Shown piece after piece: positions 13,507 through 23,233 of a stretch of DNA of 51,537 bases. Origin of the DNA: Vitrella brassicaformis CCMP3155 (taxonomy: Eukaryota > Protista > Chromerida); assembly GCA_001179505.1 (NCBI GenBank), contig CDMY01000563.1, forward strand, positions 1 to 51,537, given 5' to 3'. Position numbers and translations under genes: made by a program. Position 1 is the first letter of the stretch. Each line of letters starts with the position of its first letter. The notes below the pieces were generated by a model that saw only the letters and a program-made list of their open reading frames with translations, was not told the DNA's origin and searched no databases.

Positions 13507-15743
13507 AGGGATGCCCATTCAGGTGGAAGCGGCAAGCGATGAGTGTTCTTTCCCGTGCGTGGTGGAGTGAGATTAGCGACTCCCAAGACATCATGTGTGC
13601 GGTGGGTGGGGGGATATGTGTATGTGTGTGTGTGCCCGTTTGCGTTGTGTGCGAGGAAATGGGCGCCAAGCGTCCTCTCCTCTCCTCCCCTCTCTCTCCT
13701 TCGCCTTCGTGTGGGGTGAGGTGGGATGGGATTGGACGCATCGCATGTGTGTGTGTGTGGTGGTGGACAGACAGACAGATGGACTGACACTAACAGCTCG
13801 GCTCGGCTCTCGCAGTGAGTGACATGGGACTAATCAACCAACCGACCTCATTTTGTGTACGCCCCGGTGGTGCGCTGTTGCAATGAGTCAGTCAATCACT
13901 CCATGAGTCGTCATGCCATCGATCCACCATGCATATGCATGGCAACAGCATGCCATGCAGTGTCCCCTCCCCACGTGGTATGTCTATCGATGGGTCGATG
14001 GATGGAGAAAAAAGGCGTGCTTCCTTTCTCGCCCGTCCGCCCGCCCAGAACACCCCCAGGAAGCCAGCCAACACTCTCGCGGTCATTCGGGTAGAGAGAT
14101 ACAGACAGACGGGCAATGCACAGCATAGAGGCTTCATTCAGACCTTAAGGACCAACAGCCTATCTCCCACTCTCACACAGGACACCACACCACACCACAC
14201 CACACAACTCAACAGAACATAACCCACCCCATACGCCCTCTCTGCGCATGTGTGTGTGTGTGTGTGTGTGTGTGGCCGCTCAACCGCACGGGTCATCTGT
14301 CGGCAGCTGACCTGCCCCAACCGAAACAAGACAGGACCAATGGTGATAGGTGCTGTCATGTTCACGCTGGCTCAGGTCAGTGACCAACACACCACGCCTG
14401 GGAAAGAGACGACGAACACCCCCCCACACACACGTGCTCTCTGTTCTCGTCTCGTCCACCCCACCCGCCCTCTCGTCATCACACACGAAGGGAAACCGAA
14501 ATGGATGGATGGATGGATGAATGGAACGAACAAACCACACACACACACACACAGACTCGTCCTTCGTGTCTGTCTGTCTGTCTGTTCTGTCTATCCGTTG
14601 TGTCTTGCTTGATTCAATTATGGCGCACGCACAACGATATGGCACAGCCAGGAATGAATGAATGAATGAACACAAATGAATGCATTCAGGGTATTAATAT
14701 CGATAGCTAACAGGGAGGATGGATCACGACCCGAATGAAATGCGATGCTGGTGTCATGTGTGTCATGTGGGGTGGGGTGGGCTGCACTCGCTGCTCATTG
14801 GGCACGCAGGCAGCCGTGCCGGCCGTGGTTGGTTCGTCTGCCCGCCTGTCTGTCCGTCACCCAAATGCGGTGCAATGGATGCATGGATGGGGGAAAAGAT
14901 GGGTGGCTCACTCTCTCACTCAGTCGACCAGGGCAGGGCAGGGCTAGGCAACACACACGCACCCAGATCCACACGCAAGCCCACACAGTGTCCAGAAACA
15001 AAAGGGGGCCGGCCGTGGCCGTGTGTGGTGTGGTATGGTCTGTGTCGTATCAACAGAACAAAATACAAATGGGGGTGGGGTGGGGTGGCTGGGGGGATGG
15101 ATGAATGAATGGCGTCCGTCCGTCGGGGAAAACCAAACCAAACATGAGGCATTTTCGGTCGTGGCTACACGCATCAGCATCATGCAGGCAGGCAGGCAGG
15201 CAGGCAGGCAAGCAGAAAGCCGGGCAGGCAACACAGCTCTCATCCTGTCTATCTATCTGTCCCTCCTAGCGACCCCTCTCTGTCTGCTGCGGATCCGTCA
15301 AAAAATGCGGCTTCTCCTCTCGCCCTCTCCACTCTCCCCGTCTCTCTCTCACTCGTGTTTCTGACTTCCTCTCTCTCTCTCTCTCTCTCTGAGCGAGCGT
15401 GTCTGTCTGCGTTTCTGAGATACAGCACATCAACCGCTGGGTCGTTCGGCAGTTGTTTGTGCTGGCAGCGGGCAGTCAGTTGCGATCTGCCCGGCCCTGC
15501 AGGCACTGATGTCCCCTATGTGTCCCCCTCTCCCTCTCTCCCCCCCTCATATTTCGCTCTGCTTCACTTCGGAATGACACACACATGCGCACACGCACGC
15601 ACACACACACAGACATACAGACAGACAGACGCATAGAGACAGAGAGGGCAATACAGCGATAGAGAGAAATGAATGTCCCTGCCCCTGTAAGGATGGAAGG
15701 ATGGAGGTGTGAGCATGTAAGTGTGGATACCCCCCCCCCCCCC

Positions 15744-16043
15744 NNNNNNNNNNNNNNNNNNNNNNNNNNNNNNNNNNNNNNNNNNNNNNNNNNNNNNNNN
15801 NNNNNNNNNNNNNNNNNNNNNNNNNNNNNNNNNNNNNNNNNNNNNNNNNNNNNNNNNNNNNNNNNNNNNNNNNNNNNNNNNNNNNNNNNNNNNNNNNNNN
15901 NNNNNNNNNNNNNNNNNNNNNNNNNNNNNNNNNNNNNNNNNNNNNNNNNNNNNNNNNNNNNNNNNNNNNNNNNNNNNNNNNNNNNNNNNNNNNNNNNNNN
16001 NNNNNNNNNNNNNNNNNNNNNNNNNNNNNNNNNNNNNNNNNNN
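15744..16043. other. Assembly gap (300 N) flanked by poly-C
   Basis: N run bordered by C homopolymers on both sides. Confidence 1.
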
Positions 16044-17106
16044 CCCCCCCCACCCCCGCCCTCCCTGTCCCTCCCGTCGCTGCGAAAATTGCAGTCAGTC
16101 ACTTTGACGGGCGGACAAGAACCACGTGCACTTCATTGGGTGGGCAAAGTCGAAGGAGCCATACACACACACACACACACACACACGGACATGCACAACA
16201 CACGCAGAGAGAGAGAGAGGGAAAGAACAATACATACAAAAAAAGATACCGCGAAGTGAGACAGACAGAGTGTCGGCACAGCTCAGCCCGGCGCCTCAGT
16301 GGGAGTCATGCACGGCACTCGTGTGCATGCCCACTGCAGGCGGGCAGCTGACCATCCCGGCCGCACACACGCACTGCACAGGCACAGGCATAGGCACGAG
16401 CTGACTGATGGTATATATGCAGCGAAAAAGCCTCACCCATCCCTCCCCTCACCCCACAGGCAGGAGCGCGTGTGTAAGATAAAGAAGACAGACAGACACA
16501 GACAAAGACAAGAACAAGGACGACAGCATAGATGGCATAGGATGGCGGGGCAGAGGGGAAACGTTCACCACCCAATATACCCACCCATACCTACCCCCAA
16601 AAACAAACCATGCGACAGCAAAGAAACAAGAAGAGACTGATGGATGGATGGATGGAGAGGAGGGAGTGGCTGGATGGCTGGGATGCCATGGTCCCATCGG
16701 AAGCGGTGGGTCGGTGCGTGGGCAGAGAGCAACGGGGCGCGCCTCCTCGCCCGCTGTCTCGTCTCGCATACACACCCCTGGGGTGGGTGCGGTGCACTGC
16801 ACTGACTGACAAGAAATATCCATGTGTGTGTGAATGCATCACAGACCATAGAAAGTACAATCCACTGATCCATCCATCCGTCCATCCACTGCGTTGCATT
16901 GCACATATCAGCAGTGAGTGCCGCCGCCCCTCCCTCCCCTCCCCCATCCATCCAGACACACGTAAACACGCAACCACACACAACCACACGCAACACGCAA
17001 CACAGCATCCCCAAAATTGCCGCACCCTCCCATCTTCTGTCCGTCCGTCCGTGTGAACAGCCCCAAAACCTGGCCCCACCCTGCATCCAATCCATGTCCC
17101 CTCCCT

Positions 17107-17406
17107 NNNNNNNNNNNNNNNNNNNNNNNNNNNNNNNNNNNNNNNNNNNNNNNNNNNNNNNNNNNNNNNNNNNNNNNNNNNNNNNNNNNNNNNNNNNNNN
17201 NNNNNNNNNNNNNNNNNNNNNNNNNNNNNNNNNNNNNNNNNNNNNNNNNNNNNNNNNNNNNNNNNNNNNNNNNNNNNNNNNNNNNNNNNNNNNNNNNNNN
17301 NNNNNNNNNNNNNNNNNNNNNNNNNNNNNNNNNNNNNNNNNNNNNNNNNNNNNNNNNNNNNNNNNNNNNNNNNNNNNNNNNNNNNNNNNNNNNNNNNNNN
17401 NNNNNN
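17107..17406. other. Assembly gap (300 N) flanked by C-rich tracts
   Basis: N run. Confidence 1.
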
Positions 17407-17526
17407 CCCCCCCCTCCCAGCCAGCCATCAAGCGGCACATTCATGACGATACTTTACACACATACACACACAACACAGAGAGAGAGACATAAGGAAGGGA
17501 TAGAGCGAGAGGAGATGTATGTCTGT

Positions 17527-20500
17527 CTAGCCTCCCCGTGTGGCCGTCATGTAGACGGGAGTGTCGTCCATCACGAACTGGGCGCGCCGGGCCGTCTTCC
17601 GCACTCCCTGATGTGACACAATGGAGCGAAGGTGTGATGATGTGATCTTTCGTGCATCGGGCTGTGATGTGACTCACCTCCCAGACTGCGTGGTTGGTGT
17701 GCGCGTGTGCAGTGGTGTTTGAGTTTTTCCTGGGCGCGCCGAAGCCCTTCTTGCCGTGCACGAGCTTGTAGATGGCGCGGGAGGCCTCGTTGGCATGGTA
17801 GTGCGGCACACTGACAGACACGAGGGGAGGGAACACATTGGAGGATGGTGTTGTGTTGTGTGTGTGTGTGTGTGTGTGTGTGGCCATATATGCCTACCGC
17901 AGCTGCAGGTGTGTGAGCAGGGAGAGGCTCATGAGGTTGTGGTGGAGCGCATCGAAGACCCACAGCACATGCCTGCACACCACACACCGAAGGAAGAGCC
18001 ATTCACACACACAGGGTCACATCGGCCCAGCTGGGTGCGCGCGTCTCTAGCTCGGCAGAGCTGTCGTACGTGTTGGATCTGAGCCTCTCGGTGGCGTGTG
18101 CGAGCCACTCCCACGTGTAAAACTCGCTCTCATCGCCCTCCTCCTTCTTGGATGATGCCCCTAAACCACACACAACACAACACAATCACCACGTGCTGCC
18201 CGCCATCCAGCGAACGGTCCCACCTTTTCCAGAGTAAGCCCTGAGCAGCCTGGCGTACACACACAGCCACAGGTGCACCACCAGCAGGGGGCCACCGTGC
18301 CACAGCAGCAGCGGCGTCCTGCACACAGTTGACACAACCACACACACAAATGTCTGACTTCTTCCCCCTCCCTCCCTCTTTTTGCCAGACGGACCATCCG
18401 AGTCTGGTGCCGATGTAGTAGTTGACAGTGAGCGACAGCAGCATGCCCACGAAGCTGAGGAGCCCCTTGGGCAGGTTGAGGAACCCGAATGCATCCCACT
18501 TGAGGGCGGTCAGCAGGGAGTCCCGCGGCTTGAGCTTGGCCGTGTCGGGCACAGCCACAGCGTGGTTCCTGTAGGGGATGAGGAAGGCCGAGTGCACCAG
18601 CCACCCCAGGGTGTGGTCCACCACCTCGTAGCCGGAGAAGCGCACATTGCCGCACTCGTAGCCGATGACCCACAGACCCAAAGCTGCCGTGCCCTGAGAA
18701 TAAGAAACGCATTAAGGCAGGCACCCTTGTGTGTGTGTGTGTGTGTGAGGAGTGTGAGGGGTACCTGGACGAGGGCGTAGATGATCCAGACGGCCACTTT
18801 GACGGCGGCCATCCACTGGCTGGTCTGCGGGCCTTCCTGCAGGATGATGCTTGAGAAGACCCCCAGGCTGAGGTGGAGCACCGCCATGACCGACACCACC
18901 GCGCCGATGGCCACCACGTCACGCACAAAGGTGAACTGCATCAAACACACACACACACACACATCCATCCATCCATCCATGTGTGTGTGTGGTCTGGTAT
19001 CTCACAGAGCTGAGTAGGAGTGAGGTCCTCTGGCAGTGTGGCGGGATGACCGACTGCAGGTCCTGCTCACTTGGGATCTGCACACAGCACACCGCGTTCA
19101 CACACTCAGCAGCCTGTGTCTGTGTTGTGTGTGTATACCTTCTCGAGTGTCTGCTGCTGCGTCTCGGCTGACGTCTCGGCATTGACGGCGAGCTTGCTCT
19201 TCCGCTGCTCCCAGAACTTGGTCGCCCGCTTCCTGTCCGTCACCCAGCCAATGGCCGCCATGCTGTCGATGAAGATCTTCGCAGTGTTCCACTGACACGC
19301 CATCCCCAGCTCACTGAACAAGCACGCACACACGCTCAGGAATCATCTCACTGAGATGAGAGCTTCTCTTGACCTGGCGGCATAGTCGAAGGGATAGACG
19401 TGGTGCCAGTTGTGCCATCCCTCGCCGGTGGTGAGCCAGGCCACGAGAGCGCTCTCAGCGGGGTTGATCTGGTCGTCGTAGGGCCGCTCGCCCCACAGGT
19501 GGGCCACGCTGTTGACGCACCAGGTGGCGTGCAGCTCCACGATCCAGCGGAAGATGCCCAGCACGAAGAACCCAAGCCAGAAGCTCCCGTACACGGCCAT
19601 CGTGTAGTAGCCAGGCACAACTGCACCCACCCACACAACAACACGACGCAGTGACGTGACGGGGGGAGGGGAGGAAGGTGGAGAATGGCGGTCGGTGCTC
19701 TGCTCACTGTAGCAGAAGAAAAAGGCGAGCCACGGGTCAGCGTTCTTCTGGAAGACCACCACGGGGTCCTGCAGCAGGTCTGAGCAGTCGATCTCGCGGC
19801 CCGCCTGCTTGACGGCGTCGGGCTTCTTGAGGATGAGCCACCCCATGTGGGAGTACCAGAAGCCGCGCTTGGCGTTGTGCGGGTCCTTCTCCGTCTCAGA
19901 GTGCTTGTGGTGCGTTCGGTGGTCCCGCGCCTGCACCCACCACATACACAGAGAGAGAGGGAGAGAAAGGTTGTGCACACACACATGGGGGAAATGGGTG
20001 TGCGGTGTCTCTGACCCAGTGGTAGATGGATCCCTGGTTGGCGATGGAGTTGAGGACCATGAGGACGATGCGGGCGGGGAGGTTGGCCTTGTAGCTGCGG
20101 TGGGCCCACAGCCGGTGGGCGCCAGCTGTGATGCCCAGCCCCGAGATGTTCCAGATGAGGATCACCTCGATCAGCAGCCGCACGCGGGACGGGTGGGCGA
20201 GCATCATCATCAGGCCCACCAAAGCCAAGAAATGCATCGTTGACAAAAACACGGTCATGCCGCTGCGCACGCTCTGAAGGACGAGAAGAACAAACATCGG
20301 TTTTAACACACCACACCAACACATGGGGGTGTGCCTCACTCATTCACTGACTCACCGGGACGTAGTTCTTGAGGTAGAAGTGTGCGAAGAGGATGGTGTA
20401 TGAGAAGTACATGAGGAGTGCGCCCATGGCGTTGTTGTAGTGGGAGAGGTCGCCCGTCACCGCGGGGTTCAGCAACGCCGCGATCGTTATCGCCAGACCG

Positions 20501-21583
20501 ACAAACATCTGCACATGCAGCGCACCACACACACATGGCATAAGCGTCGCGTGCGACGTGTGCTGTGTGTGTGGGGGCATCCCCCCTCCCTCACTTGGCT
20601 GAGCTGGGCGCCGGTAATGTATGGCCGCAGCTTATACAAAATCCTGACCGATCATCACAGTACACAGACAGACAGACAGACAGACAAAGATAGATGGCAC
20701 GGATCTGTGTCGGTGGGAGTGTGTGTGTGAGTATATGTGTGTCGTTTACTTACTTGTTCCTAGCGAAAAGGACAGAGAGAGCGTAGTAGAGGTACATGAC
20801 GCCGTGGATGCAGAGGTTGATGAAGACGAACAGGTGGGCGAAAGACACATTCAGCGACTGCGCGTGCCAGCAATACAGCGCCTGAGAGATAAGATAGGCC
20901 AGCACACCCATCACACCCATCACACATGACACAATTGATTGACACAGCCGGCCTGTCGGTGCTGACCACTGTGAGGTGGTGGTAGGCATGCAGGAACGTG
21001 ATCGGCCGCTTCCGCAGCGCCAGCAGCACCGTGTCGCCGAACTCCAACGCCTTGGTCAAGGTGAACAGCGTCACCACTGCACGAGTGTTGGGCTGATCCA
21101 TCACACAAAACACAGCGACACTCACAAGTGAGACACTGTCTTTCGCCGCATAGTGCGTGTGTCGGTCTGTCTCCTCCCTGCCCACCATGTAGTCCCTCTC
21201 GTGGGCAAACGGCGTCAGAATCAGCCGCCAGTCGTCCAGAAGCTGCACACACAGCACACAGCCAGCCCACACACACACACACACAAGGGAGACAGAACAG
21301 TCACTCGACACCGCCCAGCCCAGCCACCCCCCTGTCTCGTGTGTGAGTGCTGGCTGACGATGAGTATGGCTCCGAGGATGGAGAGGACGGCCAGCACGAA
21401 GTTCCAGGCAAAAATGAAGGGCTTGATGGGCAGCGGCTCCCGCTTCCTCATCCAGTGCCGCAGCGCCATGATGACCGGCAGGTACAGCACCATCGACGCC
21501 AGTAGCGGCCACTTGAGGTCTGCCGCCAGCTGTGCGCCGCGGCCGGGTGTCCAGTACCCCTGGCTCACTGGAGAGGGCGCCAT
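17527..21583 (-). CDS. Fusion protein: ELO-family fatty-acid elongase + delta-9 acyl-CoA desaturase + FAD2/omega-6-like domain lacking His boxes (about 900 aa by hand count)
   Basis: ELO motifs: [38 protein letters not shown] motifs: [35 protein letters not shown]2-like segments: [41 protein letters not shown]. The domain junction introns 20274-20355 (CCG|GTGAGT..TTCAG|AGC) and 19078-19138 (AAG|GTATAC..TGCAG|ATC) are both phase 0 to phase 0. All introns join in frame from ATG 21583 to TAG 17527. Confidence 0.9.
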
Positions 21584-21773
21584 GGTGGTTGAGATGTGCT
21601 CGGCCGAGAGGGAGGCGCAGATCCCCAGAGAGAGGACGGGGGGACAGACAGAGAGGAGGGAGGCACAGCCAAACACAAGAGGCAGAGATCCACGTTACCC
21701 CAGCTCGCAGATCTGCGAGCTGTCCTGTGCCCGAGAGACGGCGTGTTTGGAAGCTCTACTACCGCCTAACACC
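21584..21773. promoter_or_regulatory. Probable bidirectional promoter, ELO-SCD fusion / PGM
   Basis: 190 bp between divergent ATGs; CAGATCTG at 21708-21715. Confidence 0.6.
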
Positions 21774-23233
21774 ATGCTGTCATCGTTTCTTACCTTGGTC
21801 TCGGTTCTTGTGGTGGAATTCAGTGTGACGCCATGCAGCGGGTTCGTGCTGCTGAGGCGACCCTCTGCACGGCCGTCGTCGCGGGCAGGTCTGAAGATGC
21901 AGCTGCAGTCGGTGCAGCCACTAGAGAGGGAGATCCAGCGAGTGGAGGAGGACGAGGCCAATGCGGCGGCAGGGAGGAAGGTGAAGCATGTGCTGACGCT
22001 GATCCGGCATGGGCACTCGGTGTGGAATCAGGACAACATCTTCACCGGCTGGGTGAGCTGCTGTGCGGGCAAACCCACACATCAGTGCATGCACTGCTGT
22101 CTGTGAGTGACAGCTGTATGTGTGTGTGTGTGGTCGGTGACATCAGGTTGATGTGCCTTTGGCCAAGGACGGTGAAGCAGAGGCTCGCGAGGCGGGTCAG
22201 ATCATGAAGGCGGCCGACATCAAGCCGGACAAGGTGTATGTGTCGGTGCTGAAGCGGGCCATCCAAACCACCTGGATCGCTCTCGAGGAGATGGACAGGA
22301 TGTGGCTGCCGGTCGAGTGCAATTGGCGGCTCAACGAGCGGCACTACGGCGGCCTCAGTGGACTCAACAAAATCGAAACGGTGCAGAAACACGGAGAGGA
22401 ACAGGTTAGTGAATGAGTGGAGGGAGGGAGGGATGGACAAGGGATGGAGGGAGGAAAAGGCAGCATGGGATGGAGGGTGTGTGTGGTGTGTGTCAGGTTC
22501 ACATCTGGCGTCGGTCGTATGACATCCCACCGCCCCCTGTGGACAAACACAGCCAGTACTGGCCGGGACACGACGAACGGTGACTGAGTCAGTCAGTCAG
22601 CAGGCAGGGATGACACCACACGCGCCAGCCCAGCCATCGTGCACATGTTGGTTGTGTGGCTGCACATCATCTCATCCGTGTGTGCATGTGCAGGTACAAG
22701 TTGGTGCCCGAGGATGAGCTGCCGCTGAGCGAGTCCCTCAAGCTCACCAAGGACCGCTTCATGGTGGCCTGGCAGGGCAACATCGTACCCGACCTGATGG
22801 TATGGCCGGCCAGGAACCAACACACGCTCCAGTAGCTAGCTACTTTTGCCCTTGTGTTGCCCTTGTGTGGTCTCTTGTTTCATTCATTCAGGCGGGCAAG
22901 AGGCTGCTGGTGTCGGCACACGGCAACTCGCTGCGAGCACTCGTCATGCACCTGGACGACATCAGCAAAGAAGTCATACCCTCCCTCAACGTAGGCAGGC
23001 ACACCAGCACAGCACTAAATGCTGTGTGCGCCTGCACCGGGAACGGCTCTTCATGTGTGTGTATGTGTGTGCAGATCCCGACGGGTGTGCCGCTGGTGTA
23101 CTACCTGGACAAGCAGTTGAAGCCCCTGAGGCATCCCGACGCCATCGAGCCGCTGAGCGGGCAGTATCTGGGTGACCAGGAGAAGATCAAGGCTAGGATC
23201 GGCGCCGTCAAGGCACAGACGGGGGCCAAGTGA
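21774..23233 (+). CDS. gpmA: 2,3-BPG-dependent phosphoglycerate mutase with bipartite (plastid-type) leader
   Basis: [18 protein letters not shown]|[48 protein letters not shown]|IPTGVPLVY. Leader [39 protein letters not shown]. Confidence 0.95.

What the first reader, a model, noticed from the sequence alone, without database searches (positions are those of the whole stretch)
17527..19077. The FAD2-like third domain has lost all three histidine boxes but keeps an open frame (pseudo-desaturase)
Seen: box 1 HECGH is YECGN (18646-18660). Box 2 (HxxHH plus flanks) is deleted: LIPY is followed directly by RNHAVAVP near 18570. The post-TM QHT His reads LRA. Box 3 HVAHH reads roughly SLLTH before [10 protein letters not shown] (about 17900-17945). 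Flanking FAD2 structural motifs (IPPHC, GLWVI, HS.LIPY, PLLVV.LWL, WEWL, PHYHA.EA) are preserved over eight in-frame exons. Established: the eight conserved His residues bind the di-iron centre and are required for catalysis. Inference: the domain is kept for a non-catalytic job such as scaffolding, cytochrome b5 docking, lipid-substrate binding or handing off 18:1, or product sensing.
Basis: partly seen in the sequence, partly recalled or inferred. Interest (0 to 1): 0.78.

Follow-up and report, generated by a model that had tools for sequence, protein, structure and literature searches.

The report
Dead FAD2 domain on elongase-desaturase fusion
The last third of a Vitrella elongase/delta-9-desaturase fusion protein is a FAD2-type desaturase that has lost its iron-binding histidines, and this dead domain has been kept under purifying selection from chromerid algae to Toxoplasma and Eimeria.

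Summary
Window 17527-19077 (minus strand) holds the last eight exons of one 18-exon, 885-aa gene of Vitrella brassicaformis CCMP3155. My model is identical to database protein P0133 and has the length published for Vbra_9666. Spliced transcript contigs join the ELO, SCD and FAD2-like parts into one mRNA.

The ELO and SCD domains keep their His boxes. In the third domain, box 1 reads YECGN, box 2 is gone within a roughly 65-residue deletion, QHTH reads LRAY, and box 3 reads SLLTH. Only 1 of 9 ligand positions remains.

The domain is a FAD2 homologue (hhalign 100%, E 7e-42; confident desaturase/AlkB-type fold), but Pfam does not detect it.

The loss is old and shared. Cardiosporidium, Toxoplasma, Hammondia, Neospora, Besnoitia, Eimeria, Cyclospora, a gregarine and a chromerid-like transcript carry the same lesions and form one clade (100/100). 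Digyalum, euglenid and giant-virus-like fusions keep every His.

In coccidia the dead domain has dN/dS of 0.14-0.18, against 0.04-0.07 for SCD, so neutral decay is rejected there.

What the domain does remains inferred; I favour a structural partner of the SCD domain. I found no paper describing it.

The parts
17527..19077 (-). FAD2-derived pseudo-desaturase domain (aa 548-885), exons 11-18: 19077-19006, 18935-18765, 18693-18395, 18318-18224, 18160-18070, 17972-17898, 17810-17678, 17607-17527 (stop TAG 17529-17527)
   Evidence: Exon model and translation. Introns confirmed by spliced contigs. Homology to intact FAD2 domains: hhalign 100%, E 7e-42.
18646..18660 (-). Former His box 1: YECGN in place of HECGH (Y640, N644)
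18547..18594 (-). HSAFLIPY followed directly by RNHAVAVP. This is the site of the roughly 65-residue deletion that removed His box 2 (HxxHH) and the following cap segment. The PY-to-TM3 distance is 38 aa here, against 91-156 aa in intact relatives.
18234..18248 (-). LLRAY in place of LQHTH after TM4.
17909..17923 (-). Former His box 3: SLLTH in place of HVxHH. Only the last His (H811) is kept.
17780..17809 (-). [10 protein letters not shown], a FAD2-type C-terminal cap motif that is retained
19139..20273 (-). Delta-9 (SCD-type) desaturase domain with linker, exons 7-10 (aa 247-547). HRLWAH (20117-20100), HRTHH (19921-19907), NSVAH (19513-19499) and HNWHH (19414-19400) are all intact.
   Evidence: Pfam PF00487 at aa 292-483, E 1e-13.
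20356..21583 (-). ELO elongase domain, exons 1-6 (aa 1-246), start ATG at 21583-21581. HAYHH (20990-20976) and the other three ELO motifs are intact.
   Evidence: Pfam PF01151 at aa 24-246, E 8e-53; motif table; spliced contigs.

Best explanation
The stretch encodes the C-terminal domain of one ER-type polytopic protein of Vitrella brassicaformis with the order ELO elongase, delta-9 SCD desaturase, FAD2-type domain. Its length (885 aa) is that of the published Vbra_9666.

The third domain descends from a delta-12/omega-type desaturase that was already fused behind ELO-SCD in an ancestor. Fully intact three-domain fusions still exist elsewhere. It was inactivated once, before chromerids and apicomplexans separated. 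The inactivation replaced the box 1 histidines, removed box 2 in a roughly 65-residue deletion of part of the loop between box 1 and TM3, and replaced the post-TM4 His and most of box 3. The domain therefore cannot hold the di-iron centre and is not a desaturase.

Shown here: the lesions, the homology, a confidently predicted desaturase-type helical fold, transcription as part of one mRNA, the shared origin of the lesions, and purifying selection on the orthologous domain in coccidia.

Inferred, not shown: what it does now. I think it most likely acts as a non-catalytic structural partner that packs against the active SCD domain, like a built-in heterodimer subunit that stabilises or positions it. 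It is less likely to be a substrate tunnel, because the deleted segment lies in the loop that I expect to form the entrance of the pocket in active enzymes.
For: Gene and transcript:
- The 18-exon GT-AG model gives one 885-aa ORF, identical to database protein P0133 of Vitrella brassicaformis CCMP3155.
- Intron-less contigs in four runs carry the exon joints. One 2276-nt contig runs from the FAD2-like 3' end through SCD into the ELO exons.

Lesions:
- 8 of 9 His ligand positions are lost.
- The loop from PY to TM3 is 38 aa, against 91-156 aa in intact relatives.

Homology and fold:
- hhalign probability 100%, E 7e-42.
- AlphaFold2 of the domain: pLDDT 81, pTM 0.79.
- Best solved match is a desaturase-fold chain, 8xks_K, Z 18.8; next is the alkane monooxygenase AlkB, Z 9.4.
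- Pfam PF00487 does not detect the domain, here or in the apicomplexan orthologues.

Shared, single origin:
- The same lesions and the same 36-38 aa loop occur in Cardiosporidium, coccidia, Eimeria and several transcriptome and environmental sequences of unknown species.
- These domains form one clade at 100/100 support.
- A profile built from them scores members at 166-504 bits and intact domains at 153 bits or less.

Selection:
- Toxoplasma/Neospora third domain: dN 0.119, dS 0.77, omega 0.15. SCD domain omega is 0.06.
- The half from TM3 to the C-terminal cap has omega 0.06-0.12 in the three pairs among Toxoplasma, Hammondia and Neospora.

Other support:
- Intact ELO-SCD-FAD2 fusions exist.
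- Delta-12/omega activity in Vitrella is assigned to three separate genes in PMC7464705, Table 5.
Against: - No experiment shows loss of activity or any new function.
- Selection was measured in coccidia, not in the Vitrella lineage. Against its nearest relative (P0142) synonymous sites are saturated, and the domain is only 35% identical, against 67% for SCD.
- The domain evolves 2-3 times faster than SCD.
- Four complete ELO-SCD ORFs from apicomplexan-like transcriptomes end 35-105 residues after SCD and have no third domain, so it can be dispensed with.
- The full-length model has pTM of only 0.65, and no contact map was available, so packing against SCD is not demonstrated.
- Vitrella differs from most relatives at several positions conserved in the dead-domain clade: RNHAVAVP instead of PRRAxxE, LLRAYS instead of LLENGP, and S807 instead of H.
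Confidence: 0.72

Rival explanations
1. The dead domain still binds an acyl chain or lipid. It would work as a sensor, regulator or hand-off site for the 18:1 product of the adjacent SCD domain, or as a docking site for cytochrome b5, rather than as a passive structural partner.
For: - The four transmembrane helices and C-terminal cap motifs that I take to line the former active-site region are the best-conserved parts.
- That half of the domain has omega of 0.06-0.12, as low as a catalytic domain.
- Some positions are conserved only among the dead domains: R in GRF, E in place of the post-TM4 His, Q-A in box 3.
Against: - The roughly 65-residue deletion lies in the loop that I expect to help form the substrate entrance in active relatives.
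- The positions conserved only among the dead domains are not kept in Vitrella itself.
- No binding data exist.
Confidence: 0.17
2. The domain is a functionless relic, carried along only because it is fused to an essential ELO-SCD protein, and is slowly decaying.
For: - It evolves faster than SCD.
- Pfam no longer recognises it.
- Some lineages have ELO-SCD without it.
Against: - The frame is open across eight exons and is spliced into mRNA.
- Length and motifs are retained across chromerids, a gregarine, coccidia and Cardiosporidium, with no stops or frameshifts in any full-length orthologue.
- Omega is 0.14-0.18 at an unsaturated dS of about 0.8.
Confidence: 0.07
3. The domain is still an oxidative enzyme that builds a metal site from other residues.
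For: Vitrella keeps E641, H662, H801 and H811 near the former site.
Against: - Eight of nine ligand positions are lost and box 2 is physically deleted.
- Across the clade no His set is conserved that could replace them.
- According to Shanklin et al. 1994, as cited in PMC2731242, all eight box histidines are individually essential in this enzyme class.
Confidence: 0.03

Closest known systems
FAD2 / omega (delta-12/15) membrane fatty-acid desaturases (Pfam PF00487)
   Same: Clear homology over the whole domain (hhalign 100%, E 7e-42). Shared features are the four long helices that align with the FAD2 transmembrane helices, and the motifs IPxHC, GLWVxG.EC, HSxLxPY, GPxLVxNxWL, LHH and VPHYHAxEA. 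The predicted fold is of the desaturase/AlkB type.
   Different: All three His boxes and the post-TM4 His are lost or deleted. About 65 residues between box 1 and TM3 are missing. The domain scores below the Pfam threshold. It sits as the third domain of a fusion and has no start codon of its own.
Intact ELO-SCD-FAD2 three-domain fusions (P0147-P0163 on giant-virus-like contigs; P0175/P0184/P0202 of marine protists), the SCD-FAD2 proteins of euglenids (P0151, P0169, P0171; no ELO match), and the SCD-FAD2 protein of Digyalum oweni (P0057)
   Same: Same domain order and similar length (843-884 aa for the nearest group). The SCD domains fall in one well-supported clade with the Vitrella protein.
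   Different: Their third domains keep HECGH, HxxHH, QHTH and HVxHH and pass Pfam. They look like complete 16:0 to 18:2 assembly lines; that reading is inference.
Apicomplexan 'fatty acyl-CoA desaturase' / SCD (Toxoplasma TGME49 XP_018637681, Hammondia, Neospora, Besnoitia, Eimeria, Cyclospora, Cardiosporidium)
   Same: These are orthologues with the same dead third domain and the same deletion.
   Different: In these parasites the N-terminal ELO domain has also lost its HxxHH box, so only SCD is left intact. In Vitrella the ELO domain is still complete. Plasmodium SCD is published as 949 aa with unexplained N- and C-terminal extensions (PMC2731242). I could not retrieve it, so homology of its extensions is untested.
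FADL subunit of the chloroplast Ycf2/Orf2971-FtsHi import motor (PDB 8xks_K, 8xqw, 8xqx)
   Same: It is the closest solved structure to the model (Z 18.8, 277 residues aligned). It is a desaturase-fold protein found as a subunit of a non-lipid machine, and its box 1 reads HECAM.
   Different: It is only distantly related in sequence (14% identity). It is a free-standing protein in another complex and organelle. Whether it is catalytically dead was not examined here.
Partnerships of membrane di-iron enzymes: FAD2-FAD3 heterodimers and the CER1-CER3 complex of plants (from my own knowledge, not checked here)
   Same: These enzymes are reported to work as dimers. In CER1-CER3 the His clusters of one partner are reported to be dispensable. 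This is the model for a 'built-in inactive partner'.
   Different: Those partners are separate polypeptides. No interaction was tested for the Vitrella domains.

Membership tests
Membrane fatty-acid desaturase, FAD2/omega type (functional enzyme) | Three His boxes (HxxxH, HxxHH, HxxHH; eight His) that bind the di-iron centre | tested here: not met
   YECGN; box 2 deleted; SLLTH. Only 1 of 8 box His remains.
Membrane fatty-acid desaturase, FAD2/omega type (functional enzyme) | Conserved His after TM4 (QHTHP) | tested here: not met
   The motif reads LLRAYS; R754 stands at the His position.
Membrane fatty-acid desaturase, FAD2/omega type (functional enzyme) | Sequence passes Pfam PF00487 gathering score | tested here: not met
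   No Pfam hit at E up to 0.1 for aa 548-885. The intact third domains of P0057 and P0149 score 69 and 79 bits.
Membrane fatty-acid desaturase, FAD2/omega type (functional enzyme) | Desaturase activity | not testable with these tools
   Needs heterologous expression and fatty-acid analysis.
FAD2/omega desaturase superfamily (by descent) | Significant homology over the domain and the same fold | tested here: met
   hhalign 100%, E 7e-42, 254 aligned columns. phmmer of the whole fusion protein to free-standing FAD2-like proteins reaches E 2e-25, through the third domain. AlphaFold2 pLDDT 81. Structural matches: desaturase-fold 8xks_K Z 18.8 and AlkB Z 9.4.
Pseudoenzyme domain (dead homologue kept by selection) | Catalytic residues lost while the fold and open frame are kept | tested here: met
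Pseudoenzyme domain (dead homologue kept by selection) | Expressed | tested here: met
   Intron-less contigs of four runs cover all eight exons joined to SCD. Evidence at the protein level was not available.
Pseudoenzyme domain (dead homologue kept by selection) | Purifying selection after inactivation | tested here: met
   Omega is 0.14-0.18 in Toxoplasma, Hammondia and Neospora at dS 0.13-0.84. The domain is conserved across deep lineages. For the Vitrella branch itself there is only deep conservation, because dS is saturated against P0142.
ELO-SCD-FAD2 three-domain fusion | One ORF and one mRNA with the three domains in this order | tested here: met

The most novel reading that the evidence does not exclude
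The sole delta-9 desaturase of many apicomplexan parasites, and its chromerid orthologue, would be the surviving core of an ancestral elongase/delta-9/delta-12 assembly line. Its dead FAD2 domain, and in the parasites the dead ELO domain too, would have become obligatory regulatory or lipid-sensing modules that control SCD activity or stability. That would be a new class of membrane pseudoenzyme, and a parasite-specific handle on an enzyme proposed as a drug target.
Probability: 0.2. Interest if true: 0.8.

Novelty: new variant of a known kind. Interest (0 to 1): 0.62.

Why it matters
Dead-enzyme domains are well known among soluble enzymes, kinases and proteases. In the papers I could search I found none described for the membrane di-iron desaturases.

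This one identifies sequence that was previously unexplained. The Vitrella gene is listed in the literature only as an elongase and a delta-9 desaturase (PMC7464705). The C-terminal part of the apicomplexan orthologues gets no Pfam match. The published Plasmodium SCD has long, unexplained extensions and about 18 predicted transmembrane segments (PMC2731242); whether they are the same domains is untested.

The data give a graded series. All three domains are active in giant-virus-like and some protist proteins. Two are active in chromerids. One is active in apicomplexans. This traces how polyunsaturated fatty-acid synthesis was dismantled on the way to parasitism.

It also sets up a simple question for experiment: why does selection keep a desaturase that cannot bind iron?

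Tried and rejected
- **Pfam on single exons** found nothing for the third domain. The whole domain also fails, so homology had to be shown by phmmer and hhalign against fetched relatives.
- **My first exon model** used an in-frame donor at 18007. Transcript contigs showed the real donor at 18070, which removes 21 residues.
- **The exhaustive representative search with exon 13** gave only weak hits (best E 3e-8) and no self-hit, but it did deliver Cardiosporidium and Digyalum.
- **A word search with the Cardiosporidium third domain alone** found only two proteins.
- **Mixing exon fragments into an alignment** (A1) made a useless profile and was dropped.
- **Plasmodium SCD and a named Chromera orthologue** (Cvel_14249, 884 aa in PMC7464705) were not retrieved by any search. 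Their status is untested. P0142 may or may not be Chromera.
- **dN/dS of Vitrella against P0142** is uninformative because dS is saturated.
- **The exact Neospora protein P0138** was not on record as a gene; I used the locus of its cluster mate instead.
- **Foldseek against PDB** gave nothing at E of 0.001 or better. VIA-align was needed.
- **The profile of the dead domains** finds no PDB sequence.
- **Literature searches** for elongase-desaturase fusions, pseudo-desaturases and TgSCD domain structure found no description of this domain.
- **A short joint, 20324 to 18168, seen in all four runs** lies in (AC)n-rich introns. I set it aside as a repeat artefact.
Full report
**What is there.** On the minus strand the window carries one 18-exon gene, from ATG at 21583 to TAG at 17527. 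Every intron has GT-AG borders. The exons join into a single 2658-nt ORF of 885 aa.

I laid contigs of four public runs on 17450-21700. They show intron-less, spliced forms with joints at the predicted borders and no base differences. One 2276-nt contig runs from the 3' end through all FAD2-like and SCD exons into the ELO exons. The contigs corrected one border: exon 15 ends at 18070, not at an alternative in-frame donor at 18007.

The model is identical to database protein P0133, 'unnamed protein product [Vitrella brassicaformis CCMP3155]', whose contig length equals the window. Its length is that of Vbra_9666.t1, which Tomcala et al. 2020 list both as an S/MUFA elongase and as a delta-9 desaturase, without mentioning a third domain (PMC7464705).

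**The observation.**
- Pfam finds ELO at aa 24-246 and FA_desaturase at aa 292-483.
- The ELO motifs (KxxExxDT, HAYHH, HxxMYxYY, TxxQxxQ) are intact, and so are the SCD boxes (HRLWAH, HRTHH, NSVAH, HNWHH).
- In an alignment with 18 intact FAD2-type sequences, the nine invariant His ligand positions read Y, N, deleted, deleted, deleted, R, S, T, H.
- The loop from the conserved PY to TM3 is 38 residues, against 91-156 in intact proteins. About 65 residues that include box 2 are missing.

**Is it really FAD2-derived?**
- Pfam PF00487 does not see the domain at E up to 0.1.
- phmmer of the protein finds free-standing FAD2-like proteins at E down to 2e-25 through this domain.
- A profile of the dead domains aligns to a profile of intact ones with probability 100% and E 7e-42 over 254 columns.
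- AlphaFold2 folds the domain confidently (pLDDT 81, pTM 0.79) into two long helical hairpins plus shorter helices.
- The best solved matches are a desaturase-fold chain (8xks_K, Z 18.8, 277 residues) and the alkane monooxygenase AlkB (Z 9.4). Everything else scores 6.8 or lower.

**Relatives.** An exhaustive search with exon 13, followed by profile searches, recovered two kinds of relatives.

- Dead like Vitrella. These have Y/T/F/Q in place of the first His of box 1, box 2 deleted with a 36-38 aa loop in most, E in most members (R in Vitrella) for the post-TM4 His, and mostly Q-A at the end of box 3. Members are Cardiosporidium cionae, Toxoplasma, Hammondia, Neospora, Besnoitia, several Eimeria, Cyclospora, the gregarine Lankesteria, several transcriptome or environmental sequences, and P0142. 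P0142 is the nearest relative of the Vitrella protein: an intron-less JGI transcript, 68% identical in the SCD domain.
- Fully intact. These are the SCD-FAD2 protein of Digyalum oweni, euglenid SCD-FAD2 proteins, three-domain fusions of marine protists, and a tight group of 843-884 aa ELO-SCD-FAD2 proteins. One member of that group (P0150) lies on an intron-less, gene-dense contig next to Evr1/Pox_E10-like and DUF5760 genes, so it looks like giant-virus DNA.

In a maximum-likelihood tree of the third domain, the 13 dead sequences form one clade with 100/100 support on a long stem. A profile built from them separates members (166-504 bits) from intact domains (153 bits or less). Together with the shared deletion length, this points to a single inactivation before chromerids and apicomplexans parted. 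Whether Digyalum branched earlier or kept a paralogue cannot be decided from these trees.

**Selection.** I rebuilt the coding sequences of Toxoplasma, Hammondia, Neospora and Besnoitia from their genomic loci by exact protein-to-DNA mapping. I then computed dN/dS for each domain.

| Comparison | Region | dN | dS | omega |
|---|---|---|---|---|
| Toxoplasma-Neospora | third domain | 0.119 | 0.77 | 0.15 |
| Hammondia-Neospora | third domain | 0.109 | 0.72 | 0.15 |
| Toxoplasma-Hammondia | third domain | 0.023 | 0.133 | 0.17 |
| all pairs | SCD domain | | | 0.04-0.08 |
| all pairs | N-terminal domain | | | 0.26-0.8 |

The half of the dead domain from TM3 to the C-terminal cap has omega of 0.06-0.12 in the three pairs among Toxoplasma, Hammondia and Neospora. 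Neutral decay is therefore rejected for the orthologous domain. For Vitrella against P0142, dS is saturated. The domain is 35% identical there, against 67% for SCD, so the case for the Vitrella branch rests on deep conservation and the intact, expressed frame.

**Context.** In the apicomplexan orthologues the ELO HxxHH box is also lost (GHGILR, THVAGH, LHCYAR). Vitrella and P0142 keep it. This gives a series:
- all three domains intact in virus-like and some protist proteins;
- ELO and SCD intact in chromerids;
- only SCD intact in apicomplexans.

Four complete ELO-SCD ORFs from apicomplexan-like transcriptomes lack the third domain altogether, so it is not indispensable everywhere. Tomcala et al. 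assign omega desaturation in Vitrella to three separate genes, which fits a redundant delta-12 domain having been freed to change. Gratraud et al. 2009 described Plasmodium SCD as 949 aa with unexplained N- and C-terminal extensions and 18 predicted transmembrane segments (PMC2731242). I could not fetch that protein, so its relation to this architecture is a prediction only.

**Mechanism.**
- Shown: the domain cannot bind a di-iron centre as its relatives do; it is predicted with confidence to keep the family's fold; it is made as part of the ELO-SCD mRNA; and its orthologues are under purifying selection.
- Inferred: it serves as a non-catalytic partner of the SCD domain. I prefer this over a lipid-binding or sensing role because the shared deletion lies in the loop that I expect to help form the pocket entrance. 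But the low omega of the second half and the residues conserved only among the dead domains (GRF, E for His, Q-A) would fit either reading.
- The full-length AlphaFold2 model (pLDDT 80, pTM 0.65) does not settle domain packing, because no contact map or coordinates were available.

**Known or new.** Full-text searches for natural elongase-desaturase fusions, pseudo-desaturases and the domain structure of Toxoplasma or Plasmodium SCD found no description of this domain. The nearest precedent I met is FADL, a desaturase-fold subunit of the chloroplast Ycf2-FtsHi import motor, whose box 1 reads HECAM. I rate the finding a new variant of a known kind: a pseudoenzyme domain in an enzyme family where none seems to have been described.

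An earlier first-stage note of this scan (s1-201623) recorded the three-domain fusion on this same stretch.

Noticed in passing
P0150 contig (JGI sample 3300059473, no DNA served); relatives P0147-P0163: A fully intact 876-aa ELO-SCD-FAD2 fusion sits on an intron-less, gene-dense contig. Its neighbours are Evr1/Pox_E10-like, DUF5760 and SNase genes and a second free-standing desaturase. This looks like giant-virus DNA carrying a complete 16:0 to 18:2 module.
   Followed up: partly
N-terminal domains of P0014, P0134, P0136, P0138, P0144 and others: In apicomplexan orthologues the ELO domain has also lost its HxxHH box (GHGILR, THVAGH, LHCYAR). In the coccidia its omega is 0.3-0.8. Their SCD is therefore flanked by two dead enzyme domains. 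Vitrella and P0142 keep an intact ELO.
   Followed up: partly
PDB 8xks_K / 8xqw_M / 8xqx: The closest solved structure to the model is FADL, a desaturase-fold subunit of the Chlamydomonas Ycf2/Orf2971-FtsHi chloroplast import motor. Its box 1 reads HECAM. It may be another non-catalytic use of this fold.
   Followed up: partly
P0153, P0162, P0164, P0168 (eukprot GHVS/GHVQ transcriptomes and a Logan contig): These are complete ELO-SCD ORFs of 564-650 aa that lie inside the apicomplexan SCD clade. They end 35-105 residues after SCD and have no third domain. Two of the tails end in RVCARG.
   Followed up: partly
window 21833-23233 (+): A multi-exon phosphoglycerate-mutase-like gene ([20 protein letters not shown]...) lies head to head with the fusion gene. 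One transcript contig extends more than 1 kb upstream of 21700, so the two 5' regions may overlap.
   Followed up: no
window about 17300-17405 and about 15700-16050: Runs of N (assembly gaps) begin about 120 bases downstream of the stop codon, so the 3' UTR of the gene may be incomplete in this assembly.
   Followed up: no
window 18168-18185 and 20307-20324: All four runs hold a contig that joins these two intronic (AC)n-rich spots with 21 other letters between them. It is probably a repeat-driven match to another locus. Not explained.
   Followed up: no
window 18007-18069: An alternative in-frame GT donor at 18007 would add 21 residues ([21 protein letters not shown]) to exon 15. The contigs show only the 18070 donor, but contigs cannot exclude a rare isoform.
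   Followed up: partly
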